From positions 124,001 to 188,000 of the IMG/VR virus record IMGVR_UViG_3300032770_000001: 64,000 bases of DNA; one strand, written 5' to 3'. The notes beneath the pieces were generated by a model, which saw nothing but the letters and a program-made list of their open reading frames with translations, did no database searches and was not told the origin of the DNA. The translations under genes were made by a program, and so were the position numbers. Shown piece by piece: positions 6,703 through 59,248 of the stretch. Numbering within the stretch: position 1 is the first letter of the stretch; each line of letters opens with the position of its first letter.

Positions 6703-6765
6703 AACCTCTCAAAACAAAGCACTTAAACCTAGCTAAAAACGACTCCCCGCAGGTAGAATAAGGGT

Positions 6766-6993: not shown

Positions 6994-7002
6994 GAGGCTC
7001 TC

Positions 7003-7182
7003 ATGTCGATCCCCGTACCGATCACCAAAGAAGAAGTCAAGAAGATCACCAGAGAACTCAAGAAGCCGCAGGACGTGATCTGTCTTGACGTGGACTCCCA
7101 CCTTAAGACCCTGCTCGTTGGGCAGAGCATGTTGCTGCTCGGCAAGACCGTCAAGGCAAAAATCGTCAAGGGTTACAAATGA
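7003..7182 (+). CDS. Small hypothetical protein (59 aa)
   Basis: GAGG RBS; MSIPVPITKEEVKK...; ATGA overlap with the next gene. Confidence 0.6.
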   Translation: MSIPVPITKEEVKKITRELKKPQDVICLDVDSHLKTLLVGQSMLLLGKTVKAKIVKGYK

Positions 7183-7499: not shown

Positions 7500-7511
7500 G
7501 TATTATCTAGT

Positions 7512-7793
7512 GTGGATGACCGCGACACGTTCGACCGCAAGTGCGTAGAGTTGCACATGGCGGTCTATTTTCACATGCAGGCGATTCAGTTCGCCGACGA
7601 GCGCAACGCCGAGCCGGGGGAGATGCGTGAACTCCTGAAACGGCGAACCGATCTGGTTCAGGAAGCGTTGGATTACGTCTACGAGCATTGGGAGTATCTG
7701 GACGAGCCGACCAAGAAAGATTGGGAAGCTGCGGCTGCGGAGTTCCCACTAGCGAGAGAGAATGAAAACAGCGAAGCTACCGACGAAGATTGA
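7512..7793 (+). CDS. Helical hypothetical protein
   Basis: 93-aa ORF; GGTATTA 6 nt upstream of the start. Confidence 0.65.
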   Translation: MDDRDTFDRKCVELHMAVYFHMQAIQFADERNAEPGEMRELLKRRTDLVQEALDYVYEHWEYLDEPTKKDWEAAAAEFPLARENENSEATDED

Positions 7794-8409
7794 CAGTTTC
7801 CGGGGCGTATACCGCTTCCTGTCGAACTTCTACGAGAACTGCCCGGTGAAGCTGTGGGTGAGCACCAAGGGCAAGGTCTTTGCGAATTACGATGGGCTCT
7901 ACGGAATTGTCGAGCACATCAACTCGTTCAATCATCTGCCGGACGATCATCCGGATCGCGATTTTCTGTACTGGATTGAGACTTACGACAACGTCGAGAA
8001 TGCGTATCAGGCGGCGAAGTCCCTCGACATAAACGTTCGTGAGAAGTTCCGTGTTCGCGGCCTGCGTCCGTGGGATGCGAAGAAGCTTGGCGGCACAGTG
8101 AAACTACGTCCTGATTGGGATACAGGCACCGGGACTATGCCGCCGTTTAAGATTGTGGTCATGCTCGGTTTGCTGATGCAGAAATTTGAGCCGACCATGC
8201 TACGGCGTCGTCTGCTTTCAACGATGACGGCTGAATTGATTGAGGGCAACAACTGGCACGACACGTATTGGGGCGTCTGCGACGGGAATTGCAACGAAGG
8301 TCCGCATGAACCGTTCGGCACCAACCATCTCGGCAGGCTGCTGATGATCGTGCGAGGGTATCACGGAGGTTTGTACGATGGCACGAGTATTCTTACAGCG
8401 CGTCAGTGA
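7762..8409 (+). CDS. NADAR (YbiA-like) family protein
   Basis: FLSNFY, ENAYQAAK, LRPDW, LIEGNNWHDTYWG, NHLGRLLM. Confidence 0.9.
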   Translation: MKTAKLPTKIDSFRGVYRFLSNFYENCPVKLWVSTKGKVFANYDGLYGIVEHINSFNHLPDDHPDRDFLYWIETYDNVENAYQAAKSLDINVREKFRVRGLRPWDAKKLGGTVKLRPDWDTGTGTMPPFKIVVMLGLLMQKFEPTMLRRRLLSTMTAELIEGNNWHDTYWGVCDGNCNEGPHEPFGTNHLGRLLMIVRGYHGGLYDGTSILTARQ

Positions 8410-8560
8410 CGCGCTGGATTGGCTGTACGAGTTCCGGATTCCGATTGTTCTGGTGATCCTGCTCGTCCTGATGTTTGCGTTTCATAGCTGCGAGTTCCGC
8501 ATTTCGATTGATTCGCGCCCTTCGGAGACGACGACCGAACAAGGTGCTCGAAAATAATTG

Positions 8561-8589
8561 TTGACAGTGAATCGACTTTCTGGTATTGT
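8561..8589 (+). promoter_or_regulatory. Sigma70-type promoter of the Pro tRNA operon
   Basis: TTGACA 8561-8566, 17-nt spacer ending TGG, TATTGT 8584-8589. Confidence 0.8.
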
Positions 8590-8694
8590 ATATGTGTAGT
8601 CGGCCATGCGACAAGCTTCCTTCTAAACTTGCTCATTGGCGAACAAAAACAGCTTTCGCGATATCCGACTCATATATTAGGAGCTAGTCTTCAA

Positions 8695-8772
8695 ATGACA
8701 TTGATGCGACCAACGCCGACGTTTCGACCGTGCACACCTACCGTGCGCGGGGGAATCGGACACACCCTTTAG
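8695..8772 (+). CDS. Putative 25-aa Pro/Thr-rich leader peptide MTLMRPTPTFRPCTPTVRGGIGHTP
   Basis: AGGAG upstream; Pro codons CCA, CCG, CCG, CCT, CCT; followed by mutually exclusive hairpins. Confidence 0.6.
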   Translation: MTLMRPTPTFRPCTPTVRGGIGHTL

Positions 8773-8870
8773 GGTTCCGGTCGCACCCCGCGCTGCTAGG
8801 CGACGGGGCTCTGGCAAGTTGTGAATTTCCCAACATTACTGCCATTTTTACCCCGTCCTTGTGCGTAAGT

Positions 8871-8945
8871 CAGGGCGTGGTGTAGTGGTTGCATCCCGCA
8901 TTTGGAATGCGGTGGTCGCTGGTTCGACCCCAGCCGCCCTGACCA
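8871..8945 (+). tRNA. tRNA-Pro(TGG), divergent
   Basis: CAGGGCG/CGCCCTG acceptor stem, CCGCA-TTTGGAA-TGCGG, ACCA. Confidence 0.9.
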
Positions 8946-8950
8946 ATCAT

Positions 8951-9027
8951 CAGGGTAGAGTTGGGTCTGGTTCAATCCCCGCCTCGGACGCGGGTGTTCG
9001 CGGGTTCAAATCCCGCTGCCCTGACCA
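8951..9027 (+). tRNA. tRNA-Pro(CGG), divergent
   Basis: CAGGGTA/TGCCCTG acceptor stem, CCCGC-CTCGGAC-GCGGG, ACCA. Confidence 0.85.
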
Positions 9028-9043
9028 AATTTCTGAGGTCAGT

Positions 9044-9202
9044 ATGTTTGAGGCGAGTGAGTGGCGGCATAAAGGTTGTGGTGGTCAGCCCTGTGAGTTT
9101 GAGCCGGGGCGGTGGGCTTGCACGGGGTGCAAGCGTGCATGGTACGCTGGAGCGAACTTTTTCACGTACCTCGCAAACGTGGTCTTTGAAAAGAGAGTCT
9201 GA
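9044..9202 (+). CDS. Small Cys-containing protein (52 aa)
   Basis: MFEASEWRHKGCGGQPC...CTGC; short, support is weak. Confidence 0.4.
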   Translation: MFEASEWRHKGCGGQPCEFEPGRWACTGCKRAWYAGANFFTYLANVVFEKRV

Positions 9203-9350
9203 GGTGGAGCGACAGAGGTGGGCAAGTGGCATCGCTGCCTGTGTCGTTGTACGAAGCGTGGGGGCTTGCTCCTGCGTTAGTCCACAGTACAGCCTGCCCA
9301 ACCGATGCCGGATGGCTGCCGAGTCGCCCATAAATTTCGTTTCGAGGAAT

Positions 9351-9427
9351 CAGGATGTAGCTTAGCTTGGTAAAGCGCGTGCTTGGGGTGCACGAGACCG
9401 GGAGTTCAAATCTCCCCATCCTGACCA
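9351..9427 (+). tRNA. tRNA-Pro(GGG)
   Basis: CAGGATG/CATCCTG acceptor stem, CGTGC-TTGGGGT-GCACG, ACCA. Confidence 0.95.
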
Positions 9428-9459
9428 AAAATTTGAGAAGTAACAAGACCGAGGAAGGT

Positions 9460-9516
9460 ACATGGATGCTGGGGCGGTGTGCGCACACGTGAGTTCAATG
9501 CTCACTCCATGTACCA
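9460..9516 (+). ncRNA. 57-nt mini-tRNA (acceptor stem, T-arm and CCA; no D-arm or anticodon loop)
   Basis: ACATGGA/TCCATGT plus ACCA; GTGAG-TTCAATG-CTCAC T-arm. Confidence 0.55.
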
Positions 9517-9586
9517 TCGGATATTCCGACACGCTAAGATTGTACGGTGCGTGACATCGAGTGGAAGTCTCGAAACAGGTTTTTGA

Positions 9587-9658
9587 TGCGGGGTAGTGTA
9601 GTAGCGCACGGAAGTCTCATAAACTTCCAGACCAGTGCGACTCTGGCGACCGCAACCA
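9587..9658 (+). tRNA. Degenerate tRNA(CAT), Met or Ile2
   Basis: GAAGT-CTCATAA-ACTTC anticodon arm, short D-arm, T-loop TGCGACT, mismatch in the acceptor stem, ACCA. Confidence 0.7.
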
Positions 9659-9661
9659 TTT

Positions 9662-9737
9662 CGGTGTGTAGCTCAATGGCTAGAGCACTCGGTTTGGGGC
9701 CGAGGGGTTGGGGGTTCGAGTCCCTCCACGCCGACCA
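9662..9737 (+). tRNA. tRNA-Pro(TGG), canonical
   Basis: CGGTGTG/CACGCCG acceptor stem, CTCGG-TTTGGGG-CCGAG, ACCA. Confidence 0.95.
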
Positions 9738-9752
9738 TTTTGGAGAACGAAC

Positions 9753-10413
9753 ATGATTGTTGAAATTCGAGCAGCGGAAGGTGGAGATGACGCAAAGCTT
9801 CTCGTGTCCGACCAACTCACGATCTATGCGAGATTGGCGGCTCGGAGGGGTCTTTGAGTTTGAGATAACCGAAGAACGTCCCGGCATAGCGGTGTTTCAG
9901 GTGACGGGACAGGGAGCCCCGGCGTTGTTTGCAAATGAGAGCGGGGGGCACCGTTGGCAGCGAGTTCCGCCGACCGAACGATACGGACGACGGCAGACAT
10001 CGACAATCACTGTCGCAGTTTTCGAGGAGCCGAAGGTCGAAGAGATCAACATTCGTGCTCAGGATTTAGAGTGGGATACGTTCCGGAGCCGTGGTAAGGG
10101 CGGACAGAACGTTAACAAGGTCGAGACGGCTGTTCGCGTGACGCACAAGCCGAGTGGCTTGGTCGTGCGTTGTGAGAATGGCCGTAGTCAGTGGCATAAT
10201 AAGCGAACCGCTTTGCAGATTCTTGCGGCACGGTTGGAAGCGCGAGATCGAGAGCAGAGACAAAGCGTAGTGGTTGCAGATCGTCGGTCGCAGATCGGCA
10301 CAGGGCAGCGAGGCGACAAACGTCGTACAGCAAACGAGCGACAGGATCAAGTCACGGATCATGTCACCGGGCAGAAATGGCGCTATACTGATTACGTGAA
10401 GGGGAACTGGTAA
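9753..10413 (+). CDS. Class I release factor homolog (RF1-like PxT, GGQ, no N-terminal domain 1), expressed through a +1 frameshift at CTT-TGA 9852-9857
   Basis: ORF0 MIVEIRAAEGGDDAKLL...RRGL* (9753-9857); the +1 frame continues with RVPPTE, GGQNVNKVETAVR, RSQIG; GGAG RBS at 9742. Confidence 0.9.
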
Positions 10414-11024
10414 TGGAACAGTATCCGAGTATCGACGGTAGCAGCAAAGCACCCATAGGGGTTCCGTGCATCGCTTTTTATAAGTACGACGGCTCTAACC
10501 TTCGATGGGAGTGGAACCCCAAGAAGGGCTGGTTCAAGTTCGGTACGCGGACGCAGTTGTTCGGTAAGGATGATCCGTTGTGGGGCAAGGCGGTGCCGAT
10601 TTTCATGAACCAACTGGCGGATGAGATCGTGTACCGGGTCAAGCACGTGGAGCGGGGCTGTCAGCGGATCACGGCGTTCACGGAGTTTTTCGGATCGGGG
10701 ACATTCGCCGGACAGCACCCGGAGATGACTGGCGGCAGCGAGGAGAAGGAATTGAGGCTCTTCGATGTCTACCTGTTCAAGCGGGGCTTGATGAAACCTC
10801 GGCAGTTCGTGAAGAGTTTTGGCGATCTACCGCAGGCGGCTCAGGTGATCTATGATGGAAACCTGAACCGACAGTTCATCGAAGACGTTCGGATGGGGCT
10901 GTACCCAGTGAATGAGGGGGTGGTTGCGAAGGGTGACGATTTCATGGTGAAGATCAAGACCTACGCATACCTGAAGCGGCTGAACGAAGTTTACGGAACT
11001 GCATATCGGAACTATTGGGAGTAA
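10413..11024 (+). CDS. ATP-dependent RNA ligase-like nucleotidyltransferase
   Basis: KYDGSN, EFFG, FDV, EGVV, KIKT motifs; TAATG overlap with the release factor gene. Confidence 0.75.
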   Translation: MEQYPSIDGSSKAPIGVPCIAFYKYDGSNLRWEWNPKKGWFKFGTRTQLFGKDDPLWGKAVPIFMNQLADEIVYRVKHVERGCQRITAFTEFFGSGTFAGQHPEMTGGSEEKELRLFDVYLFKRGLMKPRQFVKSFGDLPQAAQVIYDGNLNRQFIEDVRMGLYPVNEGVVAKGDDFMVKIKTYAYLKRLNEVYGTAYRNYWE

Positions 11025-11100
11025 TTTTGAAGGCGATTTTTCAGTTTGTTCGCAGGATTTTTCGCCGGGGCGAGTATCGTCCTATAGGGTGTTGGTGAGG

Positions 11101-11177
11101 CGGGGATTAGCTCAGCTTGGTAGAGCGCACGCTTCGGGAGCGTGAGGTCGCAGGTTCGAATCCTGCATCCCCGACCA
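11101..11177 (+). tRNA. tRNA-Pro(CGG), canonical
   Basis: CGGGGAT/ATCCCCG acceptor stem, CACGC-TTCGGGA-GCGTG, ACCA. Confidence 0.97.
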
Positions 11178-11216
11178 ATATCAAACCCTTTAGATAGACC
11201 GATATTTGGAGTCCCC

Positions 11217-11642
11217 TTGGCAAACGACGATAGTTTTTTTGAAGGTGGAGAGCGGCAGGAGAACCTGAACCGCCATAACGCCCGGAAGGGTGGGTATGAC
11301 CCGTTTAGGGTCACCGCAGGTCAAGAAAGACGCGGTGAGCGTATTACGTGGGTCGATGTCTGGCTGGCTAATCCAGACGGAGCCGCCAATCACGATGAGG
11401 CTGAGGCACTCTCGGTAGGCGACGTAATGAAACACGTAGCGTCAGAGAACGATTTGTATGTAGGTTTTGAGAAAGAACTGGCTGAGGTTCAGCGAGAGTC
11501 TTTCGATGAGTCAGGTGTCAAGCTGGCGAACATGGGGTCGAGAGAGTTCTTCAAAGACTCCCCACCCCCGGCACCAGTACCCGCCCCACGTGTGGCGGCA
11601 CCAGTGAAGAAGTCGGATGACGATTTCTTCCCAAAATTTTAA
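11217..11642 (+). CDS. Acidic hypothetical protein
   Basis: TTG start after GGAG; Pro-rich tail ending DDDFFPKF. Confidence 0.5.
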   Translation: MANDDSFFEGGERQENLNRHNARKGGYDPFRVTAGQERRGERITWVDVWLANPDGAANHDEAEALSVGDVMKHVASENDLYVGFEKELAEVQRESFDESGVKLANMGSREFFKDSPPPAPVPAPRVAAPVKKSDDDFFPKF

Positions 11643-11643
11643 C

Positions 11644-11721
11644 GCCTGTGTAGCTCAGACTGGCTAGAGCGCCCGTCTCATAAGCGGGAGGTCGGGGGTT
11701 CGATGCCCTCCACAGGCACCA
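11644..11721 (+). tRNA. tRNA(CAT), elongator Met or Ile2
   Basis: GCCTGTG/CACAGGC acceptor stem, CCCGT-CTCATAA-GCGGG, ACCA. Confidence 0.92.
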
Positions 11722-11909
11722 GTTTTAGGGAGACCGGGAACCTGCGGGCCCTTCCGAGGCTATAGCACCAGCGGCAACGGTGATTAACTGCCCAAACACA
11801 GTATCGGATACCCGGCAATTCTATTCAACAGGAGGATGAAGCAGATGGCTAACCCTAGCATCACCGTACATACCGTGTAAGGTGTGGACGGTGGGAGGTA
11901 AAAAGCCAA

Positions 11910-12227
11910 ATGCGTCACCCTCGCACCCGCGACGAACGTCGCGCTGTACGCGAGCAGATCATTGCTCGTCGCAAATTTATCGCAACCCAGATTTGGGACA
12001 TTCCGTCCTACGTCCGCCCTCCGCATGAAGGCGAATGGAACCGTTGGTCGAAGCCAGAGGAATGGGAGCCATTTCAGTGGGGTCGCTACCACAAGTGGAA
12101 CATGAACTGTGGCGATACCATGTGTCATGGTGCGAAGTATTTCAAATGCGCTTCCAAGCGTCGTAAAGCACGCAAGGAAGCCGAGTCAACCGCCGAGTTT
12201 CGTCGTCGAAATAAGGCCATCGATTGA
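11910..12227 (+). CDS. Basic hypothetical protein
   Basis: 105 aa, Arg/Lys/Trp-rich; GGAGG upstream. Confidence 0.65.
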   Translation: MRHPRTRDERRAVREQIIARRKFIATQIWDIPSYVRPPHEGEWNRWSKPEEWEPFQWGRYHKWNMNCGDTMCHGAKYFKCASKRRKARKEAESTAEFRRRNKAID

Positions 12228-12252
12228 CAATGAAAAGACTTTGGACTAGCGT
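12224..12252 (+). promoter_or_regulatory. Possible sigma70 promoter of the ncRNA array
   Basis: TTGACA 12224-12229, 17 nt, TAGCGT. Confidence 0.45.
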
Positions 12253-12309
12253 ATTATTTATTGCGGGGTCTGGTTAAACCCTAGTGGCGATGACCACTCC
12301 CCGGTTTTA

Positions 12310-12505
12310 CCCCGGCACCCGATACGCAACGGGGCGCTAGTGATTAGGAAGGGTCGAGGCGAACTGCGTGCCCCCAAGGTGGGGCTAGCCGAAAGCCCGG
12401 ATAACGTCCGACGTGGTGCCCGGTTCTAGTCAACCGTCGTGCGTCTACCTTTCGGGGAATTACAAGTACCCGAAAGGACGTGATGATGCAGTGCACTTGC
12501 CGGGG
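12310..12505 (+). ncRNA. Structured RNA A (about 195 nt, class unknown)
   Basis: Closing stem CCCCGGCA/TGCCGGGG; CCTTTCGGG/CCCGAAAGG; GCCCC/GGGGC. Confidence 0.55.
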
Positions 12506-12526
12506 TTCTTTGATCTTTGATAGTTT

Positions 12527-12762
12527 TAGAGTCGAGTGGCCCGTGATTCAACTGGTTCAGTGGTTTCAGTAAGAGGGTCGAATGGCCTGTCAGGGACAAA
12601 TAGATACTCCCTGAGCGATGTTAGACCGCTATCCCCAGTATAAAAAACGCAGCAGCGGGGGCAGTATCCGTAAGGACTGCGGGAGGCTCCACGAAAAGGT
12701 GCTAGACAACCTGTGGGAGGCCGTATCGGGGTTCTAGCTAAACCGACCTGTGCTCGACTCTA
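12527..12762 (+). ncRNA. Structured RNA B (about 236 nt, class unknown)
   Basis: 11-bp closing stem TAGAGTCGAGT/GCTCGACTCTA; flanked by T-runs. Confidence 0.65.
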
Positions 12763-12770
12763 ATTTTTAT

Positions 12771-12862
12771 GGCGGATGCCCGGATAGCGTAAGCAGTCAC
12801 GTGAAAGTCGTGTTAACAGCCGGGGCGGGGATGTTGGCGTAAGCCAAGCGAACCATCCGCCA
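12771..12862 (+). ncRNA. Structured RNA C (92 nt, GNRA loops, ends in CCA)
   Basis: GGCGGATG/CATCCGCC closing stem; GTAA, GAAA and GTAA tetraloops. Confidence 0.6.
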
Positions 12863-12867
12863 AGGTT

Positions 12868-12939
12868 TTGCCGCTGTGGTATGAAACGCTACCAAATGGG
12901 CACGGTTCCGAAAGGACGCAATGGCCCTGCCAGCGGCAA
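12868..12939 (+). ncRNA. Structured RNA D (72 nt)
   Basis: TTGCCGCTG/CAGCGGCAA closing stem; TCC-GAAA-GGA hairpin. Confidence 0.55.
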
Positions 12940-12948
12940 CGTTTTTGA

Positions 12949-13025
12949 TGCGGGGTGGAGCAGTCAGGTAGCTTGTCGGGCTCATAACCCGAAGGTCGGC
13001 GGTTCAAATCCGTCCCCCGCTTCCA
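12949..13025 (+). tRNA. Initiator tRNA-fMet(CAT)
   Basis: Three G-C pairs in TCGGG-CTCATAA-CCCGA; unpaired 1:72 (U:U); CCA. Confidence 0.9.
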
Positions 13026-13029
13026 AGTG

Positions 13030-13318
13030 TTCGCCGCCGTGGGTTGTTAGTTGTACTCAGAGTGCCGTCAGGAACAGCAAGATCGTACTAGTACCTGAGA
13101 GCGCAACCCACGGTTTAGAGGCGATTGCCGTCACCTGCGGATGTAGTACGGTCTGGGCGTCAGGTGCGCCGGGTCGGTGACCCAGACCGGAGCGACATCG
13201 TTGACCGGACATTCCGGTTTCGTTAGCAGGTCCTCATGGGACATCAGCATGGTGCCTGAGTAGTGCTGAAGTTCGAGGAACCGCGAAAGCGTGAAACCTG
13301 TGAAGCGATCCTCAGGCC
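13030..13318 (+). ncRNA. Structured RNA E with an H-type pseudoknot
   Basis: CCGTGGGTTG/CAACCCACGG; crossing helices CACCTG/CAGGTG and CGGTCTGGG/CCCAGACCG. Confidence 0.6.
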
Positions 13319-13331
13319 GATCTTTGAAAAG
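13319..13331 (+). promoter_or_regulatory. rRNA-type boxA-like element
   Basis: GATCTTTGAAAAG between two structured RNAs. Confidence 0.55.
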
Positions 13332-13332
13332 T

Positions 13333-13482
13333 TTGCGGCGGCGTTCCCGGTGTCCCGTCAATAGACTGGTTCCTGACCGGATACGTGAGTAATCGTTCTT
13401 CAAGGGGTGAAATAAAAGAACGGCGCAGAACAGGTTCCTGCGCGTGGGGCTGTGATTTTCCAGCTACTACCTCTCGCCGCAA
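13333..13482 (+). ncRNA. Structured RNA F (150 nt)
   Basis: TTGCGGCG/CGCCGCAA closing stem; GCGCAG/CTGCGC and CGTTCTT/AAGAACG hairpins. Confidence 0.55.
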
Positions 13483-13489
13483 TATAACA

Positions 13490-14025
13490 AATCTGCAAGT
13501 TGCATTCCGATGCCCGAAGCGCCCGATGAGGGTTTGCGGACGGTAGCGTGACTTGCGGAGGGTAGGTGAACGGCTTCACAGCCGCCGTCGAAAGACGGGC
13601 AAGTCCGCCGTAAATTCGGGACGACGTTCACCCGGTCAGGCACTACTAAAACAGAACCGTGGGGTGCCGTCAGTCGAGAGACTGGATGTTTCTGATTGCG
13701 CATGGCATGGCGAGGTCTCCCTATGTTTGGACGGAGGCAGGCCCTTTTCGACAAGGGACATACGTCAGAGCGGAATCACGGTGGGTATGTGGTTGGAACC
13801 ATCCATGTAGTGGCCTGACGCCTAATTTCAGTTTCCGGTCGTGGCGGAAAAGAGACGATAAACAAATAGAGACGCTAAAACTCGCTGAGAGGATGTACCC
13901 TGATTTCGACAGGGATTCTCAGCCTGTGAGACTCTGTAGGTAGCACCCACGTCTGACAGATGTTAGTGGCTCGAAAGAGCAGCAGAGTCATGCACCGTGG
14001 AGAATCGGGAATCGGTGCCGACTGG
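13490..14025 (+). ncRNA. Large ornate RNA (about 540 nt; GOLLD/ROOL-like candidate)
   Basis: Many nested helices including a long-range 13635-13646/13807-13819 pairing, GNRA loops, no credible CDS. Confidence 0.65.
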
Positions 14026-14103
14026 AAGATTTTTGGAGACAACATGAATAGCACTCACACCCCGACCGGATGACCCTTGCTCATCCTTCGGAGGTAAGGT
14101 AAT

Positions 14104-14361
14104 ATGGCATGTGACACCTGTATCTTTCTGAACAACGTTCGGACCCGCCCGGTAGGGAAGGGAAAGGACGAGCAGAAAGGCGAGAAGCTGGAGCCCTGCT
14201 CCATGAAATATGCCTGCAATCCGTTTTGGGACGGAGCGCAGGGAGTGGGCAAGGTCGTGACTGAGTCGTACTGTGCGACCTGCTCGGAAGTAGCTGACAA
14301 ATGTGGATGCACGCAAGGATTGCGTGTGATCCGGCAGCGCAAGCTGCATTATGCTCGGTAA
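14104..14361 (+). CDS. Cys-rich small protein
   Basis: 85 aa with CxxC repeats; GGAGG upstream. Confidence 0.55.
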   Translation: MACDTCIFLNNVRTRPVGKGKDEQKGEKLEPCSMKYACNPFWDGAQGVGKVVTESYCATCSEVADKCGCTQGLRVIRQRKLHYAR

Positions 14362-14363
14362 CC

Positions 14364-14450
14364 ATGAAGATTGACGACGGAACATTGATGGCGATTGGAC
14401 TGCTGGTGTTTGCAGCGTTTTACATTCTGTCTCCATTGATCGTCGGGTAA
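14364..14450 (+). CDS. 28-aa single-TM peptide
   Basis: MKIDDGTLMAIGLLVFAAFYILSPLIVG. Confidence 0.45.
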   Translation: MKIDDGTLMAIGLLVFAAFYILSPLIVG

Positions 14451-14451
14451 G

Positions 14452-14645
14452 TTCGTGCGGCTGACTCGCCTTGAGCAGGGCTATCTTAGGTGCCCTGAGC
14501 GCACACAAGCTTCAGCAGCGACGGAGTTATGACCCGTAGGGGGTTATGAGCCCTTTGGCTGCTGAGAGGGAAGTGAGTACCAGTGGCAACCGCGAAAGCG
14601 CCGATGCCCACGCCCTCCGTCCAGTTGCCTACACGTGCGCAACCT
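14452..14645 (+). ncRNA. Pseudoknotted structured RNA G
   Basis: GCGCAC/GTGCGC closing stem; CAGCAGC/GCTGCTG; loop-loop GACGGAG/CTCCGTC; GGCAAC/GTTGCC. Confidence 0.6.
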
Positions 14646-14707
14646 TTGCTTTTGGACGTGAATATTAAAATGCGAAGGAACGTCATCATAACGTGGTATT
14701 AGGTAAT

Positions 14708-15034
14708 ATGGCTGCTGAAATTCTCGAAGACGTTTACTTGCACATTGGCAACGGTGGGGTCCAGTTTCAGGTCCACCGGGACAATAAAGGGCGTTGCCTC
14801 CTGAAGGTTGGAGCATCGCATTTCGGTCAGAAGACCAACACGATGGAGTTGCTTGTGACTCCCGATAGCCTGCGGCAGATCGGCGAAGCTTTTGTTCGCG
14901 CATCGCAGCAAGAGTTCCCCGGCAAGCCGTATGTTTACAGCGCCGAGGTTCCGGTGTACACTGGTTCTGGTAACGCCGAAAGCAGCACGGGCGGCGATGA
15001 ACCAAAGCAGGAACCGCAGCAATTGACAGTTTAA
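14708..15034 (+). CDS. Hypothetical protein
   Basis: ATG 6 nt after GGTATTA; 108 aa. Confidence 0.7.
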   Translation: MAAEILEDVYLHIGNGGVQFQVHRDNKGRCLLKVGASHFGQKTNTMELLVTPDSLRQIGEAFVRASQQEFPGKPYVYSAEVPVYTGSGNAESSTGGDEPKQEPQQLTV

Positions 15035-15090
15035 CGTTCCCGAACGCAAACCGGGTGGTGGATCGTATCACTGAGACGTGATGCCCCTGC

Positions 15091-15120
15091 GGGGCAACCA
15101 AAAGTTGCCCCCGTTGTTTT
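15091..15120 (+). terminator. Intrinsic terminator
   Basis: GGGGCAAC-CAAAA-GTTGCCCC followed by CGTTGTTTT. Confidence 0.65.
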
Positions 15121-15132
15121 ATCAAAGATTTT

Positions 15133-15315
15133 ATGGCAGAAACGACCGAACGTTATATCGTGACTCACCACCAGCCATCTGAGTGGTACAACGTTTGGGA
15201 TAAACTGTGGACGACTGATGTCGTAAAAGTCAGCAGTCTCACAGGACGCGGCAAAGAGATTGCCGACAAGATTTGCGCAGACTTGAACGCTCACCCGTTC
15301 CCGCCTGCGGAATGA
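15133..15315 (+). CDS. Small hypothetical protein
   Basis: 60-aa ORF. Confidence 0.55.
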   Translation: MAETTERYIVTHHQPSEWYNVWDKLWTTDVVKVSSLTGRGKEIADKICADLNAHPFPPAE

Positions 15316-15411
15316 GTTTTCGAACTATTAGGATCATTACTGAATGAAGCTCTACGACTACACTCTCGACTTGTTTACCAGCCCCTTCCGGGGCTTGTAA
15401 TACGTGTGTCT

Positions 15412-15488
15412 GGGGCGGTAGCTCAGTCCGGTAGAGCGAGGGCCTGAAAAGCCCTGCGTCGTAGGTTCAAATCCTACCCGTCCCACCA
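15412..15488 (+). tRNA. tRNA-Phe(GAA)
   Basis: GGGGCGG/CCGTCCC acceptor stem, AGGGC-CTGAAAA-GCCCT, ACCA. Confidence 0.95.
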
Positions 15489-15514
15489 AATTTCTCAATC
15501 ACACAATTCAAATT

Positions 15515-16000
15515 TCAAGGGGACGTAGCTGATGTGGTCTTAGCGCGGGCCTGAAAAACCTGAGATGGAGGTTCGATTCCTCTCGTCCCCACCAATTTTC
15601 TTCGCGCCGTAACTTTCCGATGACAATTCGCGCAACGTACCTCGCACTTGGCGATCTCCCGTTTGATGGAGTCTAAACTGTATCCGCTTCTGACCATGAA
15701 ACAAATCTCCAGCCGTTTCTTACCACGAACATGGTCAAAATCAAGGCATACCGGATCAGTCTCCGGGCAGTCCACGCAGCCATGAGTCGCGAGATATGAT
15801 TGGACATACCGTTTGTTCCGTAACCTATCCGCACGCTTTCGAGCCCTGACCTTAGTTGCTCGCGTTTTCGAGTTCGCGTAGTATCCGGTATTGTAGTTGG
15901 ACATACAGGTCTTGCAGTGTGAACGGCGAGTGCCGAGGGTTTTATTCCGGAAATGGAACTCGCCCTCGGCTTTATTCGCATTGCATTTCGTACAAATCAT
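15515..16000 (-). CDS. HNH endonuclease whose 3' end overlaps tRNA-Phe in antisense
   Basis: CVDC...LDFDHVRG...CEVRCANCH; ATG 16000 overlaps the upstream TGA. Confidence 0.85.
   Translation of the reverse strand: MICTKCNANKAEGEFHFRNKTLGTRRSHCKTCMSNYNTGYYANSKTRATKVRARKRADRLRNKRYVQSYLATHGCVDCPETDPVCLDFDHVRGKKRLEICFMVRSGYSLDSIKREIAKCEVRCANCHRKVTARRKLVGTRGIEPPSQVFQARAKTTSATSP
15519..15594 (+). tRNA. tRNA-Phe(GAA), divergent
   Basis: GGGGACG/CGTCCCC acceptor stem, loop CTGAAAA, TTCGATT T-loop, ACCA. Confidence 0.9.
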
Positions 16001-53900: not shown

Positions 53901-55675
53901 TGCCTAAGACACGCAACCATCAGACGGGACGCCAGATTACAGTCGAATGCATTCCGTGCTACGACGAAGAGGGCAGCCGCGCCTGTATTCGGCATCACCA
54001 CAAAAACCCGCATCCAATCTATAACGACCCCACCAATCCGGCGTTAGCTCCGTTGACGGATGACAATCCGTTCATTCGCCGGGGTAAGCAGGATCGTGAC
54101 GAGCGGAAAGCGATGCTGACTGCGTTCAAGAAAAAGTACATCGGGTATTATGCACCATCCTCGGCTCTGTTCGGCAGTGAGCCGTACATCGAGATCGATG
54201 GGGATTTGAATGTGCACGGTGCCAGTGCGGAACACGACATCGTGTTCTATCGCGCTGGATGGGATGCGGCTTTCGAGTACCTCAGAAAACGTCTCAATGG
54301 ATAACGATTGGAATCCGAAGCATTTCGACGAGTGGGGTAATGAATACGTCCTCGACGAGAACGGTCGGCGGTTGCCGCCGATGCAGGCTGAGCCCAAAAA
54401 ATCCAGTGGATTCACCTATTACGACAGTTCCCAACATTGCGGTCTTTGCGGTAGAATGGACTGTAGAGGAACCTGTTTCAAATGAGATGTCAATGGGACG
54501 CATCGTCTTGGCCCTCAGGGGGCTATCTCTTAGAGTTTGATGAGAAACTTTGCTGCGGCAAACCCGGTCGTTTTCTAAACGACCCACAACACCCAGCTTG
54601 GCTCTGCGAAGATCACTACGCCGAATGGATGTCCACTCCGGGAATCGCCGATGACATCTGCAACCTTTGTAAATCCTATCCTTGTGAACTCTGGTGCAAG
54701 TACGAGTATCCAATTGACTTGCGTCCTGTTATAGTAGAGGCTGACCATGTCTCCGAAACAGAAACCCGGCAAGACCAAGGCGATTCAGGAAGCCCACGCG
54801 AAGGTACGCGCTGAGCAACATTACGGCATCAGCCTGAACAATGAAGATCGCCGGAACATCGTCAAGATGATTCAGGGAGATGGGGAAGGTGCACAGTTCG
54901 TTGGGCGCACGTCCAACCGTGCCTCTTTGTGGAAGGTCGATTACAACGACGTTTCCATGAACGTGGTATACGACAAGACCCGGCATTCCATCAACACCGT
55001 TTTACCCACAAATGCTGTGGAATTCTCGTGCTCCGTGAAGCAATCTCAGACCACTCCCGATTGTATTGAATGTCAGCAAACGCCCTGCCAGTGCCCCGGT
55101 AATTGGTCGGACTACGACTTCTCTAAGTAGGGGGTTCTGTTATGCTTCTTTACTACACCAAAGGCTATCACAACGCTTTTGTTCGTTTCCTGCACAGCTT
55201 CTTCATCCAGATGCCGTTGACAGTCTGGTTTCGTTTCATCAGCATCCTGTTCTTTTGGCAGAAAGCCACATTCGTCAATCACAGTGGGCTGAGCGATCAG
55301 CAACTCGCAGACATCTGGAAGCAGGTGCAGCAGACAACTGCCACACAGCCGTTCCAGACTGGTGACGGAGCCAAACCCGGCGATCCGCGTGCTCTCACGC
55401 TCCAACCGAAAAACCTTACGGTCACGGCGGTGCCGGACTGGAAGATTTCCGATCTGATAAAGATCGACCCGGCGTGGGCGAAGGACAAAGACCCGTCAGG
55501 TTCATTTGCCGTCATCGACAACGGTCTGCTCGGCTACGAAACCGTGGCAGGCATCACGCTGTGCTGGTATAAGCCGCGCATCTACGGCGCTGCGAGTGTT
55601 ATGGCGGCGGTTCTTCAATGGGAGTTCCAGAACGTCATCCTCAACAAGCTTGGCTACAGCGTCGAAGGTCGATAG
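53900..55675 (+). other. Run of small hypothetical ORFs (53900, 54297, 54482, 54747, 55142)
   Basis: Tiling ORFs. Confidence 0.6.
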
Positions 55676-57180
55676 GCTTTAACGCCCCGGTACAGGGCTG
55701 AGGCTTGAACGATCAGCTTGTGGTCCGCCGCCAGTACGGGCTCGTAATGGGTGTCCCAATATCCGAGCCCGTACCCTTTCCAACACTGGAGGCTGATGGT
55801 GTGGGACAGCTTGGGGCGTCCGCACTTCCGGCAGCGTAATTCTACAGTATCCGCCACGCGACCAGTCTATCACGGAACAGGCAACCCGCCACGAATAGAA
55901 CGATCAGCGTCGGCACAAAGACCGCGAAGAGCCGCCACGGTTTGAGAATCAGCATCGCGATCAGGTTGCAGATCAAAGCTACTCCGAGTGCGATAGGCAT
56001 ACTTCCTCCGATTTTGTGCCGTCCTGATGGACGATGGTGTGGTCGTGCGACAGCATGAGAAGCATCCGATCAAGGATGTCCAGCGCCCATTTGTCCAGAT
56101 CACGCGAGGACAACTGTTGCGGCATGTGCGCGTTGAGTCCTTGACCCTTCCACGGCTGCGTCATTGAATCTTGCTTCCAATCTGGCTGAACACGTTGCTA
56201 GCGTTCGAGCCGATGAGACGGACGACGCTCAGGGCGATCACCAAGATGATCGCCAGCATTACCGCGTATTCCGCAACATCCTGTCCTGATTCGTCCTTCC
56301 AAAGATACTTCAACATATTGGGGGCTCCCTTCTTTATTGCCAGTCTGATGCGTCCGGAATTGGTGCACCTTCGTCGCACTTCTTCGACTCCTCGCGGAAT
56401 CGCTCGATGTGCTTCTGACAGAAAGCTTCCAGTGCACCCATACTGTCGAAAAAGTCGGTGACGGTTCCATAACGGATACCCGCGTCCGGCTCCCCATGCC
56501 AACCGATGGCGTAAACTGGTTGACTCATCACGCCCTGATCGGTCAGAACGGTCACGTCGAACAATTCGCAGACTTCTTTCACAGCCGGATAATCCACCTG
56601 TGTGCTGTTGCTCATTTGACCCTCCGCGCCTCTACGAATCTGTAATTCTCCCATCCCTTAGTCTCGGCGTAAATACCACCAGCGTGCCATTTGTTGTCAG
56701 TCGTCTGGTAGGTGCTCATCCAAGCCGCAGGCGTATCGACGTGAAAGCTTTTCTTCTGCACCACGGTGCCGTCCGGCAGGGTCGCTTCGTAGGTCGATGC
56801 CTTCTTACCGCGAGTCGCTCCCACGCCGCCGCGTTGACCATAGGTGTTGCCTTCTTCGCCGTCGAATTTGCCGCGATAGTTGCTCATTGCTTCGGTTCCT
56901 CCGGGACGATTGTGTCGGTGTCAATCACGAACCGCAACGGCTTGGTCTCGACGCCCCTTGCCGCCCGAATCCTCCGGGCGATGTCCGCCAGATTGATTGG
57001 CGGTAACGGAAGCGGATAGATGGTCGGAGCAGGTTTGGAATCACCAAACGATACTTCTACGACCGGGTTGCTCTGCTTCGACGTGACCGAGATCGTGTCG
57101 GCAGCTTTAACTCGACCTGACGGTTCCTGCGCGAACGCCGGAACCGCAAACACTATGCACAGCAGAATGCGATATCGCAT
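55654..57180 (-). other. Leftward operon of small coupled ORFs (56884, 56612, 56334-56615, 55979, 55654)
   Basis: ATGA overlaps; 56884-57180 has a signal peptide. Confidence 0.6.
56161..56316 (-). CDS. flp: Flp (type IVb/Tad) pilin, 51 aa
   Basis: GGAG RBS; MLKYLWKDESG|QDVAEYAVMLAIILV: prepilin G|xxxxEY motif followed by a TM helix. Confidence 0.85.
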   Translation of the reverse strand: MLKYLWKDESGQDVAEYAVMLAIILVIALSVVRLIGSNASNVFSQIGSKIQ

Positions 57181-58025
57181 TAGTCAAGCCCCCACTTTCT
57201 ATTCATCTCTTTCACATCCAGCGGGTTGGTGCGGAAGCGGTTCGTCCAGAACTTGCGTGCTTCCTTCTCATCCTGCATTTCCCCGTCCATGTGGTAGTAT
57301 TCCGGGTTGTTGTTAATCATCCACTCGATCATTTCCTCGATCTCGGCAGGCGTCGGCTTGGGAGTGATCGTTCTGACCACGGCAGGCAGTTCCTCGTTGT
57401 GGTAATTGATGAACGGCTTGCCATTCATCGGAGCAAAACGGCCAACCGGGTCGTTCTCCGGCGTTGGCTTGTCCATCGAAACTTTGTGCGGCTCCGCGTT
57501 GATCGGGGGCATCGTGCACGGCATTTCAAAACCAGCCGCCTTCGTCCGGCACTCCGGTCCGAAACCGCAGGCGACCGATTCGTCCACAGTCAGCTTCCGA
57601 CCGCAGCGACCGCAGTGACCTTCATGGAAGAACTCAAGCTGCTCCGGCATGTGTTTCTTGGTCAGGTGCTCGAAGGTGAATTTGAAACCCTTAACCGAGG
57701 GGGCATCTTTGCCAGCGCACGCTTTGGCACCGCCGTGGATGAACTTGCCGCCCTTGATGAAGCCGAAGTAGGCGTAGTCGGTCTCGTTGTTCGGGCCGTT
57801 CATGAGTTTCACGAAATAGACGGGCGGGGCATCGACCGGGTCAGTGGCGCGTTTGGGCGCTTCTTCCAGCTTGAAGGTGAAGCGGTCGCCGGACTTCTTG
57901 CTGACCAGCGTGAAGCTGTAGCCGGAGAACAGGTACGCGAAAGCCAGAACCGGGTCGGTGATTACGCCGGGTCGCGCTTTCTCTTCCTCAGGTTCGGGGT
58001 TGACAGCGTTGTTCAGTTCGTCCAT
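57180..58025 (-). CDS. DUF6011-like Zn-finger protein
   Basis: CGRCGRKLTVDESVACGFGPEC; TGG-TAGAAT 6 nt before the ATG. Confidence 0.75.
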   Translation of the reverse strand: MDELNNAVNPEPEEEKARPGVITDPVLAFAYLFSGYSFTLVSKKSGDRFTFKLEEAPKRATDPVDAPPVYFVKLMNGPNNETDYAYFGFIKGGKFIHGGAKACAGKDAPSVKGFKFTFEHLTKKHMPEQLEFFHEGHCGRCGRKLTVDESVACGFGPECRTKAAGFEMPCTMPPINAEPHKVSMDKPTPENDPVGRFAPMNGKPFINYHNEELPAVVRTITPKPTPAEIEEMIEWMINNNPEYYHMDGEMQDEKEARKFWTNRFRTNPLDVKEMNRKWGLD

Positions 58026-58507: not shown

Positions 58508-59248
58508 TTGCGATCACTCGTACTGGGAGCGTTGTTGTTTTCTATTCAGGTGAATGCTCTTGCCGTCGTTCACCCCAAAACTCCGCGTGTCTCGGTCCGT
58601 ACAAAAGAGCACACAAGCCTGACACGTAAGCAGCGGCTTCGTCACCCGTTTTGGCACCCCATGTTTCCGCCAACGCATGAGTCACTCATCCGACAAAATG
58701 CCGAGATCGACCGTTTAGGTCTTGCCCGGATGTACGATCAGGACGATATCGACACCCGCGTGCAGCAAGGGATATTGGTACCGCTTCCTTTGAGCGACCA
58801 TCTGACTGTAGACCCGCATCTACCGGAGAACCGCCGCTACTGTCTGCCACTGGCAGCGAAATTCCTAACCGATCTGAGCGACAAATTCTATGCCCGGTTC
58901 GGGGAGCCTCTGCGAGTCAATTCGGCGATCCGCAACGTGGAGTTCCAGAAGAGGCTCCGTCGTTACAACCACAACGCGGCTCCCTTTGATGGTGAGGCCG
59001 CATCCAGCCATCTGGCAGGTCTGACGGTCGATCTGGAGCGCAAGCGATTGTCGAAGGCTCAGGTGCAGTGGGTTGATTTGCAGTTGCTTATCCTTCACTC
59101 CTACGGTATGGTAGAAGTGGAAGAAGAGTATTATCAGCTTTGCTTTCACGTGATGGTTTTGGGGAGATACGCCGAACCATTCGTGGATGTGCAGACTGCA
59201 ACTGTTGACACGCAATTGATCGAGGAATCGGATGCCGACCCTAGATAG
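58508..59248 (+). CDS. Secreted DUF5715 / peptidase M15-like protein
   Basis: Signal peptide; VNSAIR..EFQ..L...N.NAA...SSH..G.TVD...E...CFH. Confidence 0.75.
   Translation: MRSLVLGALLFSIQVNALAVVHPKTPRVSVRTKEHTSLTRKQRLRHPFWHPMFPPTHESLIRQNAEIDRLGLARMYDQDDIDTRVQQGILVPLPLSDHLTVDPHLPENRRYCLPLAAKFLTDLSDKFYARFGEPLRVNSAIRNVEFQKRLRRYNHNAAPFDGEAASSHLAGLTVDLERKRLSKAQVQWVDLQLLILHSYGMVEVEEEYYQLCFHVMVLGRYAEPFVDVQTATVDTQLIEESDADPR

What the first reader, a model, noticed from the sequence alone, without database searches (positions are those of the whole stretch)
56161..56316. Phage-encoded Flp pilin in a putative early leftward operon
A clear G|QDVAEY prepilin motif with a TM helix, and no Tad machinery in the window, so it must use the host system. 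It could poison or alter pili (superinfection exclusion if the pilus is the receptor). The sequence style resembles Acidobacteriota Flp pilins as I recall them, which is the main host clue.
Basis: partly seen in the sequence, partly recalled or inferred. Interest (0 to 1): 0.6.

Follow-up and report, generated by a model that had tools for sequence, protein, structure and literature searches.

The report
Flp pilin gene in wetland megaphage
A 456-kb virulent phage from wetland soil carries its own conserved copy of the small protein that builds Tad/Flp adhesion pili in Acidobacteriota. It has none of the machinery to assemble the pilus, so it most likely feeds a slightly altered subunit into its host's pili during infection.

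Summary
Window 56161-56316 (-) is a 51-codon gene with a strong Shine-Dalgarno site, an 11-residue leader ending in Gly, the Flp motif G|QDVAEY, and a 40-residue hydrophobic mature helix.

**Family.** Pfam alone is weak (18.5 bits). But 1292 relatives exist at 70-80% identity. One bacterial paralogue sits directly upstream of a complete tad locus. A family profile also hits the solved Caulobacter Tad pilins in register.

**Source.** The window lies in a 455,708-bp phage genome rated complete. That genome has no second Flp, pilus ATPase, platform protein, prepilin peptidase, TadE or tyrosine integrase.

**Host clue.** 51 of 55 species-level genome hits are Acidobacteriota, mostly Terriglobia.

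**New here.**
- The gene sits in a syntenic block in two other complete megaphages (portal 68-71% identical) and in several more viral contigs.
- It forms a phage clade with its own C-terminal signature (I35, K38).
- dN/dS is about 0.1.
- It is precisely absent from one close relative.

**Reading.** It is most likely an assembly-competent variant pilin that uses the host Tad machine. "Early" expression and superinfection exclusion remain untested. A Flp pilin on Vibrio prophages has been reported, so this is a new member of a known kind.

The parts
56161..56316 (-). flp: Flp/Tad-type (type IVc) prepilin gene, 51 codons plus TGA stop
   Evidence: ORF and translation. 1292 homologues. Profile hit to solved Tad pilins. 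Pfam Flp_Fap 18.5 bits for this member, and 11 of 18 family members match Flp_Fap.
56284..56316 (-). Leader peptide, residues 1-11, ending in Gly11: predicted cleavage site for a TadV/CpaA-type prepilin peptidase
   Evidence: Gly, Glu+5 and Tyr+6 are the only invariant columns in alignment A3. The alignment to mature chains 8u1k and 8u2b starts at mature residue 3 in both, so the cleavage register matches.
56164..56283 (-). Mature pilin, 40 residues. Hydrophobic N-terminal helix with E5/Y6. The C-terminal end carries the phage-type residues I35 and K38.
   Evidence: Column composition against the top 120 relatives. Phage-type copies all sit in the DUF6011 block.
56325..56331 (-). Shine-Dalgarno AAGGGAG, 8 nt upstream of the flp ATG
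   Evidence: Read directly from the sequence.
57180..58025 (-). First gene of the leftward cluster: 281-aa protein with a DUF6011 Zn-ribbon-like motif. In most relatives flp follows it directly.
   Evidence: Pfam DUF6011, 45 bits. Synteny in L002-L006, L148 and L151.
56884..57180 (-). 98-aa ORF with an N-terminal Sec-type signal peptide (read by eye). Overlaps its neighbours by 1 and 4 nt.
   Evidence: Translation. No Pfam family.
56612..56887 (-). 91-aa ORF with a weak DUF7196 match
   Evidence: 19.8 bits, below the cut-off.
56334..56654 (-). 106-aa ORF immediately upstream of flp, conserved next to flp in related phages
   Evidence: tblastn, 27-43% identity in L002-L006. Also present in the flp-less relative L068.
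55979..56164 (-). 61-aa ORF whose ATG overlaps the flp stop (ATGA), suggesting translational coupling
   Evidence: Sequence. No Pfam family.
55842..56000 (-). 52-aa ORF with two hydrophobic segments. A homologue lies downstream of flp in L002.
   Evidence: Translations share a conserved C-terminal motif.
55654..55857 (-). 67-aa CxxC ORF, last of the leftward cluster, convergent with the + strand gene 55142-55675
58508..59248 (+). DUF5715 protein, transcribed divergently. It is a conserved flank of the block in all related phages.
   Evidence: Pfam, 79 bits. tblastn, 40-60% identity in related loci.

Best explanation
The gene encodes a host-derived, assembly-competent Flp prepilin that a virulent megaphage of Terriglobia (Acidobacteriota) expresses during infection. 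It relies entirely on the host Tad system. Proposed steps: (1) The prepilin inserts into the inner membrane. (2) The host's short TadV/CpaA-type A24 peptidase cleaves after Gly11. (3) The 40-residue helix enters the host CpaF/TadB/TadC machine alongside the host's own 3-7 Flp paralogues. (4) The resulting pili contain phage subunits. These subunits keep the assembly core (E5, Y6, G25, N27, F32) but differ at the outward-facing C-terminal end (I35, K38, adding one positive charge per subunit). (5) The likeliest benefit is remodelling of the pilus surface, that is, receptor alteration against pilus-dependent phages, possibly including its own kin and progeny. Shown: family membership, phage location, lack of machinery, conserved synteny, purifying selection, the phage-specific signature, and a tad locus plus peptidase in candidate host genomes. 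Inferred: expression, cleavage, incorporation and the fitness benefit.
For: Identity. Complete phage genome without Tad ATPase, platform, peptidase, TadE or a second Flp. The two complete relatives also lack the ATPase and the peptidase. No tyrosine integrase. Candidate host genomes each carry flp-RcpC/CpaB-secretin-CpaE-CpaF-TadB-TadC, 3-7 flp paralogues and a short A24 peptidase, so the machine already accepts several pilin variants. Retention: the same block occurs in megaphages whose portal is 68-71% identical. Four phage copies form one clade at 94/90 support, and one clade for all six is not rejected (AU p 0.47). Synonymous sites are saturated (pS 0.66-0.77) while pN is 0.15-0.24, giving dN/dS about 0.1. 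Both population variants inside flp in other wetland samples are third-position changes in Ala15 and Val19. The phage-type signature I35/K38 occurs in 7 of the top 120 relatives. The window's own copy and P0046 (the L003 copy) lie in viral contigs, and the two further ones I looked up lie behind DUF6011. In the Caulobacter Tad pilus the C-terminal end points outward, and two natural substitutions at mature positions 29 and 37 abolish phage PhiCb5 adsorption (PMC11067988). K38 is adjacent in the in-register alignment.
Against: There is no expression data: no RNA runs hold this DNA. The true host is unknown, and the link rests on a single gene that was transferred long ago. Nothing shows that this phage, or any competitor, uses Tad pili as a receptor. 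The phage-specific substitutions are few and mostly conservative, so they may be lineage drift rather than adaptation. L005/L006 lack the K38 signature. The gene is dispensable: the close relative L068 lacks exactly this ORF and L069 lacks it too.
Confidence: 0.4

Rival explanations
1. Maintenance gene, analogous to cyanophage psbA. The phage supplies the most heavily consumed pilus subunit so that Tad pili, and therefore attachment or microcolony cohesion, persist after host transcription is shut off. The infected cell stays attached among susceptible kin until lysis. The sequence differences from host copies would be neutral.
For: Same evidence for an assembly-competent pilin as above. The phage has no integrase and is probably virulent, with a long takeover program. 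Hosts carry many flp paralogues, which suggests dosage and regulation matter. The habitat is wetland or peat, where attachment is plausible.
Against: A phage-specific C-terminal signature is conserved across phages that presumably infect different hosts. That is not expected if the aim is only to replace the host subunit, although cyanophage psbA also forms its own clades. The gene is absent in close relatives.
Confidence: 0.3
2. Poison or decoy. The phage prepilin jams the system: it titrates the prepilin peptidase, blocks the platform or caps the fibre. Piliation is abolished, the receptor is removed, and superinfection is excluded by loss of pili.
For: The phage has no machinery of its own. 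Known phage exclusion proteins do shut down type IV pili, for example Tip and Aqs1 acting on PilB (PMC11436027). Some copies carry substitutions in the hydrophobic helix (T20V in most, G19S in the window's copy).
Against: The whole length, including the outward C-terminal part, is under purifying selection. Mature length is unchanged at 40-42 residues and all assembly-core residues are retained. A jammer would need only the N-terminal part. G19S also occurs in bacterial copies: 9 of 90.
Confidence: 0.13
3. A non-pilus role. The small bitopic membrane peptide is reused for something else, such as lysis timing, membrane depolarisation or a partner of the neighbouring small envelope proteins.
For: It sits among small ORFs that look envelope-directed: a 98-aa ORF with a signal peptide and a 52-aa ORF with two hydrophobic segments. 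It is also translationally coupled to a 61-aa ORF.
Against: The peptidase motif G/xxxxEY is invariant. The sequence stays 70-80% identical to bona fide bacterial pilins even though synonymous sites are saturated. The neighbouring genes are also present in the relative that lacks flp, so they do not depend on it.
Confidence: 0.05
4. An artefact or dead passenger: a chimeric assembly that joined host DNA to a phage contig, or a recent hitch-hiking fragment with no function.
For: It is a single short gene of clear bacterial origin in a metagenome-assembled genome.
Against: The same gene lies in the same block in at least 10 independent viral contigs from other samples. Contigs from three other wetland studies cover it. 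None of the 55 bacterial loci carries any phage neighbour gene. dN/dS is about 0.1.
Confidence: 0.02

Closest known systems
Bacterial Flp/Fap pilins of Tad (type IVc) pili, e.g. Caulobacter PilA (PDB 8u1k, 8u2b) and Aggregatibacter Flp1
   Same: It is a short prepilin with a G/xxxxEY motif, Glu5 and Tyr6. The mature peptide is a single 40-residue hydrophobic or amphipathic helix with no globular domain. The profile match to the solved chains is in register. It is homologous to a paralogue placed directly upstream of cpaB/rcpC in Acidobacteriaceae.
   Different: It is encoded by a virulent phage, far from any tad gene. It belongs to a Terriglobia-specific subfamily that Pfam Flp_Fap scores below its cut-off. 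It also carries a phage-specific C-terminal signature.
Orphan flp paralogues of Terriglobia (Acidobacteriaceae, Ca. Sulfotelmatobacter)
   Same: These are the closest sequences at 70-76% identity. Like the phage gene, they are not linked to the tad locus.
   Different: They are chromosomal, with bacterial neighbours. They carry V35 and S/A38 rather than I35 and K38. The phage copies form their own clade.
Flp-family pilin genes on Vibrio harveyi Mu-like prophages phi345 and phiGANI1709 (PMC12482185)
   Same: A lone Flp pilin homologue carried by a tailed phage genome, identified in silico and assumed to use host machinery.
   Different: Those are temperate prophages, and the gene is read as lysogenic-conversion or virulence cargo. 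Here the carrier is a 456-kb phage with no tyrosine integrase, from another phylum, and the gene is conserved across a phage clade. There was no detectable sequence match in 50,697 deposited phage genomes.
Phage superinfection-exclusion proteins that target type IV pili (D3112 Tip/Gp05, DMS3 Aqs1; PMC11436027)
   Same: These are phage-encoded factors that change the pilus receptor of the infected cell.
   Different: They are unrelated small proteins that inhibit the PilB ATPase of type IVa pili. None is a pilin homologue. The present gene would act as a structural subunit.
Cyanophage psbA-type auxiliary genes (from general knowledge)
   Same: A host-derived structural gene with no accompanying machinery, kept under purifying selection and forming phage-specific clades.
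   Different: Those act in metabolism, not on a surface appendage. The analogy is functional only.

Membership tests
Flp/Fap pilin (Tad / type IVc major pilin; Pfam PF04964) | Short prepilin (about 50-80 aa) with a charged leader ending in Gly, followed by the Flp motif G/xxxxEY (Glu at +5, Tyr at +6) | tested here: met
   51 aa, with Gly11 followed by QDVAEY. Gly, Glu and Tyr are the only invariant columns in the 18-sequence alignment A3.
Flp/Fap pilin (Tad / type IVc major pilin; Pfam PF04964) | Mature peptide is a single hydrophobic or amphipathic helix of about 40-50 residues without a globular C-terminal domain | tested here: met
   The mature part is 40 residues. It aligns over positions 3-39 of the 45-residue solved Tad pilin chains 8u1k and 8u2b. 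The helix itself was not modelled here.
Flp/Fap pilin (Tad / type IVc major pilin; Pfam PF04964) | Significant match to the curated family model | tested here: inconclusive
   Pfam Flp_Fap scores 18.5 bits, E 0.0018, below the 32.2-bit gathering cut-off. 11 of 18 relatives match at E<=0.01, the best at 1.7e-7. The family profile hits PDB Tad pilins at E 9e-7 and 8e-6.
Flp/Fap pilin (Tad / type IVc major pilin; Pfam PF04964) | Genomic association of family members with a tad locus (cpaB/rcpC, secretin, cpaE/tadZ, cpaF/tadA, tadB, tadC) | tested here: met
   Met for the bacterial homologues. In 5 of 5 Acidobacteriaceae genomes, one paralogue (62-65% identical to the phage protein) lies about 400 bp upstream of RcpC. 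The full locus was verified in L067. Not met for the phage copy itself, which has no tad gene anywhere in its genome.
Flp/Fap pilin (Tad / type IVc major pilin; Pfam PF04964) | Cleavage by a TadV/CpaA-type aspartic prepilin peptidase and polymerisation into a pilus | not testable with these tools
   Candidate host genomes each encode a short (176-199 aa ORF) and a long A24 peptidase. Processing and assembly need experiments.
Phage auxiliary (host-derived) gene | Located in a bona fide, complete phage genome rather than in host DNA or a chimera | tested here: met
   PHROG DNA polymerase, portal, clamp loader and RNA ligase in the window. 455,708-bp record rated 100% complete by CheckV. Same block in other viral contigs and samples. 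No phage neighbours in the bacterial loci.
Phage auxiliary (host-derived) gene | Retained under purifying selection within a phage lineage | tested here: met
   dN/dS is about 0.1 with saturated synonymous sites. The phage clade has 94/90 support. Population variants are synonymous.
Superinfection-exclusion / receptor-modification factor | Expression reduces adsorption or entry of phages that use the modified structure | not testable with these tools
   Only an analogy is available. Substitutions at mature positions 29 and 37 of Caulobacter PilA abolish PhiCb5 adsorption (PMC11067988). The phage-type K38 is adjacent in register.

The most novel reading that the evidence does not exclude
A clade of virulent megaphages excludes pilus-dependent competitors, or protects its own progeny from futile adsorption, by pilin mimicry. 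The phage supplies a variant structural subunit that the host Tad machine polymerises, recoating the receptor filament with a phage-specified surface (K38). This would be an exclusion mechanism that acts through a structural pilin rather than an inhibitor of the pilus motor.
Probability: 0.2. Interest if true: 0.7.

Novelty: new member of a known kind. Interest (0 to 1): 0.5.

Why it matters
Phages of Acidobacteriota, a dominant soil and peat phylum, are barely known, and host links for huge phages are scarce.

- **Host link.** This gene gives a sequence-based link between a clade of 330-460-kb wetland phages and Terriglobia.
- **Marker.** It also gives a compact marker for that clade: the DUF6011-flp block, a short leader and the QIGSKIQ C-terminus.
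- **Biology.** It suggests that virulent phages manipulate Tad pili, which are organs of attachment, surface sensing and phage adsorption, by contributing a structural subunit. If that is shown, it would add a new way in which phages remodel a host surface receptor.
- **Testability.** A natural pair of near-identical phage genomes with and without the gene (L002 and L068) offers a ready comparison.

Tried and rejected
- **Anchor search with one protein.** A single-protein search for the DUF6011 neighbour in viral contigs found nothing. An alignment query was needed.
- **Deposited phages.** tblastn of the Flp against 50,697 deposited phage genomes found no match. Isolated phages, including any Acidobacteriota isolates in that set, therefore give no comparison.
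- **Promoters and terminators.** The scan found 3 promoter-like sites against 1.7 expected. The one terminator-like site is on the wrong strand. It gives no support for "early" or for operon boundaries.
- **RNA evidence.** No holder of this DNA is an RNA run. The contigs that were laid show presence in other samples only.
- **Sub-threshold T2SSE hit.** I checked the hit in the phage genome. It is a ClpX/ClpB-like AAA+ ATPase, not a pilus motor.
- **Other pilin signatures.** Regex searches for type IVa pilin or other class III signal peptides in the phage genome found nothing beyond flp.
- **Tree resolution.** The Flp tree has only 51 columns, so most forks are unresolved. I draw no donor genus from it.
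- **Other neighbours.** Pfam and PHROG scans of ten further large window ORFs gave no host-derived gene usable as a second host clue.
- **Not run: complex prediction, structure prediction, fold search.** Any hydrophobic 40-residue helix would bundle. The host's own 75%-identical pilins share the same cleavage site. A pass would therefore not separate the rival explanations.
- **Not run: the large representative-protein search.** The word search and family scans had already settled identity.

Full report
**1. What is at the coordinates**

Window 56161-56316 on the - strand is an ATG-to-TGA ORF of 51 codons.
- A Shine-Dalgarno sequence AAGGGAG (56325-56331) lies 8 nt upstream of the ATG.
- The product has an 11-residue charged leader ending in Gly. 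Next come Q-D-V-A-E-Y and an uninterrupted hydrophobic stretch. The mature part is 40 residues.
- The flp stop overlaps the start of a 61-codon ORF (ATGA).
- A six-frame regex for the Flp motif plus a hydrophobic run finds only this site in the whole 455,708-bp genome.

**2. Is it a Flp pilin?**

Pfam alone is not convincing. Flp_Fap scores 18.5 bits against a 32.2-bit cut-off, and Flp1_like scores 16.6 bits. Four other lines settle the question.
- **Many close relatives.** The word-index search finds 1292 relatives at E<=0.01. The best are 70-81% identical over the full length, many are called "Flp pilus assembly pilin Flp" by JGI, and the NCBI-named ones come from Ca. Sulfotelmatobacter and Terriglobales.
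- **Link to a tad locus.** In five Acidobacteriaceae genomes that carry close homologues there are 3-7 flp paralogues each. In every genome one paralogue lies about 400 bp upstream of an RcpC/CpaB gene. In the closed 7.2-Mb chromosome, the locus downstream of that flp reads RcpC/CpaB, secretin, ParA-like CpaE/TadZ, T2SSE ATPase (CpaF/TadA) and two T2SSF proteins (TadB, TadC).
- **Match to solved structures.** A profile of 18 family members (A3) hits the solved Tad pilins 8u1k (PilA, E 9e-7) and 8u2b (Flp family type IVb pilin, E 8e-6). The alignment starts at mature residue 3 in both sequences. The predicted cleavage after Gly11 is therefore in register with the experimentally mature chain.
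- **Family-level Pfam support.** 11 of the 18 members match Flp_Fap at E<=0.01.

Gly11, Glu+5 and Tyr+6 are the only invariant columns. In the Caulobacter filament this Glu-Tyr pair makes the inter-subunit hydrogen bonds (PMC11067988).

**3. Is it really on a phage, and does the phage have any Tad machinery?**

The window is positions 124001-188000 of a 455,708-bp IMG/VR virus record that CheckV rates 100% complete.
- The window itself encodes a DNA polymerase, a portal protein, a clamp loader and an RNA ligase by PHROGs.
- The whole genome has no second Flp, no T2SSF, no A24 prepilin peptidase and no TadE.
- The only T2SSE signal is a 16-bit Walker-A match. It belongs to a ClpX/ClpB-type AAA+ protein.
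- There is no tyrosine integrase. The phage is therefore probably virulent, as huge phages usually are.
- Assembly chimerism is excluded. A 133-kb contig of the probable source sample spans the region, and short contigs from three other wetland studies cover flp with 0-3 differences.
- None of the 55 bacterial flp loci contains any of the phage neighbour genes.

**4. Host clue**

A scan of one genome per prokaryotic species gave 55 confirmed loci.
- 51 are Acidobacteriota. Of these, 43 are Terriglobia: 26 Acidobacteriaceae, 6 Ca. Korobacteraceae/Sulfotelmatobacter and 1 Bryobacteraceae among them.
- The exceptions are two loci in one Binatia MAG, one in a Verrucomicrobiia MAG, and a 40%-identity Phycisphaerae hit.
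The top 120 protein hits point the same way.
- The DNA occurs in wetland metagenomes from six studies. Many of the matching MAGs come from peat, palsa or fen samples, judging by their record titles.

The caveat is that synonymous sites between phage and bacterial copies are saturated. The transfer is therefore old, and the clue is to the host lineage of the phage clade, not to a species.

**5. What the surroundings add**

*Operon structure.* flp lies in a run of eight tightly packed - strand ORFs between 58025 and 55654.
- In order they are: a 281-aa DUF6011 protein, a 98-aa ORF with a signal peptide, a 91-aa ORF, a 106-aa ORF, flp, a 61-aa ORF, a 52-aa ORF with two hydrophobic segments, and a 67-aa CxxC ORF.
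- The run is flanked by + strand genes, with a DUF5715 protein transcribed divergently.
- This looks like a leftward operon. Nothing says it is early.

*Conserved synteny.* The same block, with flp, is present in five other IMG/VR contigs.
- Two of them are complete genomes of 463 kb and 332 kb whose portal proteins are 68% and 71% identical to this phage's.
- Both lack a Tad ATPase and a prepilin peptidase as well.
- Neighbouring proteins are only 27-57% identical across these phages, apart from one 177-aa protein at 72%. Flp is 55-78% identical.

*Presence and absence.* With a profile of the DUF6011 protein as anchor (A1), 80 viral loci were retrieved.
- Only those five have a Flp nearby.
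- Of the eight loci that share a DUF5715 homologue, five have flp and three do not. L068 and L069 share the downstream synteny as well. L119 matched only DUF5715.
- The most telling pair is L002 and L068. They are collinear at 75-90% nucleotide identity. L002 carries the 159-bp flp ORF between the DUF6011 stop codon and the ribosome-binding site of the next gene. In the BLAST alignment L068 has only a few unmatched bases there.

flp is therefore a discrete accessory cassette that has been gained or lost recently at least once.

**6. Evolution of the phage copies**

- In a maximum-likelihood tree of 61 rows (51 columns, so weakly resolved), the window's Flp groups with L002, L003 and L004 as one side of a branch at 94/90 support.
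- Holding all six phage rows together costs 0.4 log-likelihood units (AU p 0.47). The nearest bacterial row is an Acidobacteriaceae orphan paralogue.
- The tad-linked paralogues form a separate group.
- Among phage copies pS is 0.66-0.77 and pN is 0.15-0.24, so dN/dS is about 0.1.
- The two variants seen inside flp in other samples (56260 T>C and 56272 C>T) are third positions of Val19 and Ala15 (my codon arithmetic).
- Phage copies share a signature: a short leader of the M-K-x-L-W type, Ile at mature 35 where 82 of 90 relatives have Val, and Lys at mature 38 where relatives have Ala or Ser. Most also have Val at mature 20 where 85 of 90 have Thr.
- Seven of the top 120 relatives carry I35/K38. 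The window's own copy and P0046 (the L003 copy) are in viral contigs. The two further ones I looked up lie directly behind a DUF6011 gene, with DUF5715 upstream, in four more samples.

The signature therefore marks the phage clade.

**7. How it most likely works**

*Shown.* A complete, integrase-less phage genome keeps a pilin gene under selection without any assembly gene. Candidate host genomes have the full Tad machine, a short TadV/CpaA-like A24 peptidase and a longer PilD-like one. They already run several Flp paralogues through one machine.

*Inferred.*
- The prepilin is cleaved after Gly11 by the host peptidase and polymerised by the host machine.
- All residues that form the filament core are retained, the length is unchanged and the whole peptide is constrained. 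An assembly-competent subunit is therefore more likely than a jammer.
- The phage-specific residues sit in the C-terminal end. In the Caulobacter Tad pilus this end points outward. There, two natural substitutions (prepilin N43R and T51A, mature positions 29 and 37) stop phage PhiCb5 from adsorbing. K38 is next to that position in the in-register alignment.

I therefore favour "variant subunit that remodels the pilus surface", with receptor alteration as the likeliest pay-off (0.4). The main rival is plain maintenance of piliation and attachment during takeover (0.3). A poison or decoy role (0.13), a non-pilus membrane role (0.05) and an artefact or dead passenger (0.02) follow.

**8. Comparison with what is known**

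- The protein is a member of the Flp family, in a Terriglobia-specific subfamily that the Pfam model under-scores.
- Phage carriage of a lone Flp pilin has an in-silico precedent in Vibrio harveyi Mu-like prophages, where it is read as a virulence cargo (PMC12482185).
- Known phage factors that act on type IV pili, such as Tip and Aqs1, are unrelated inhibitors of PilB (PMC11436027).
- No paper in the searched library describes Flp genes in huge or virulent phages or in Acidobacteriota phages. The Tunturi phage paper does not mention pili.
- No deposited phage genome matches.

**9. Verdict**

"Early" and the exclusion function remain open.

The finding is a new member of a known kind. It gains interest from the clade-wide conservation, the phage-specific signature and the clean presence/absence pair. 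It loses interest from the lack of any functional or expression evidence.

Noticed in passing
Whole genome (G000:C1). In the window: 4647-15594.: ARAGORN finds 61 tRNA genes in five clusters in the 455.7-kb phage genome. 16 lie in the window: Tyr x2, Leu x5, Pro x5, Met x2, Phe x2.
   Followed up: no
G000:C1:25852-26302 (outside the window, - strand): Two tRNAs have anticodon CTA (amber/UAG readers, labelled 'Pyl' by ARAGORN). Beside them is one odd tRNA called with a four-base anticodon. This hints at TAG suppression or recoding in part of the phage genome. flp ends in TGA and is not affected.
   Followed up: no
L002:6004-6162 versus L068:4833-4841: Two viral contigs are collinear at 75-90% nucleotide identity and differ by a precise insertion or deletion of just the flp ORF. 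The indel lies between the DUF6011 stop codon and the next gene's ribosome-binding site. This is a natural plus/minus pair.
   Followed up: yes
window 57180-58025 (-) and loci L068-L147: The N-terminal domain plus the DUF6011 Zn-ribbon-like motif of the 281-aa protein is widespread. At least 80 IMG/VR contigs of 4 to 463 kb carry it. Its function is unknown. In most flp-bearing relatives flp follows it within 2-3 nt.
   Followed up: partly
L050, L018, L007, L021, L036 genomes (G001-G005); L067: Acidobacteriaceae genomes carry 3-7 flp paralogues each but only one RcpC-containing tad locus. The orphan paralogues (70-76% identity) are closer to the phage gene than the tad-linked one (62-65%).
   Followed up: partly
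L010 (Verrucomicrobiia MAG); L023 and L026 (Binatia MAG): Near-typical Terriglobia-type flp genes (67-71% identity) occur in MAGs labelled as other phyla. In the tree they sit inside Acidobacteriota groups. This could be mis-binning or lateral transfer.
   Followed up: no
G000:C1:340360-341571 (L001:1318-2529): The phage encodes a 403-aa ClpX/ClpB-like AAA+ ATPase (AAA_2 plus ClpB_D2-small). Equivalent weak T2SSE Walker-A hits, in ORFs of about 400 aa, occur in the 463-kb and 332-kb relatives.
   Followed up: partly
window 56221-56280: Short pieces of unrelated contigs in the wetland runs (877-1710 nt and 446 nt records) match 34-41 nt of the flp core at 90% identity or more. They are presumably flp genes of resident bacteria or other phages.
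   Followed up: no
window 5350-6180 (+): A 276-aa ORF has a borderline HNH_3 endonuclease match (24.1 bits against a 24.8-bit cut-off). It lies inside the tRNA-rich region and may be a homing endonuclease.
   Followed up: no
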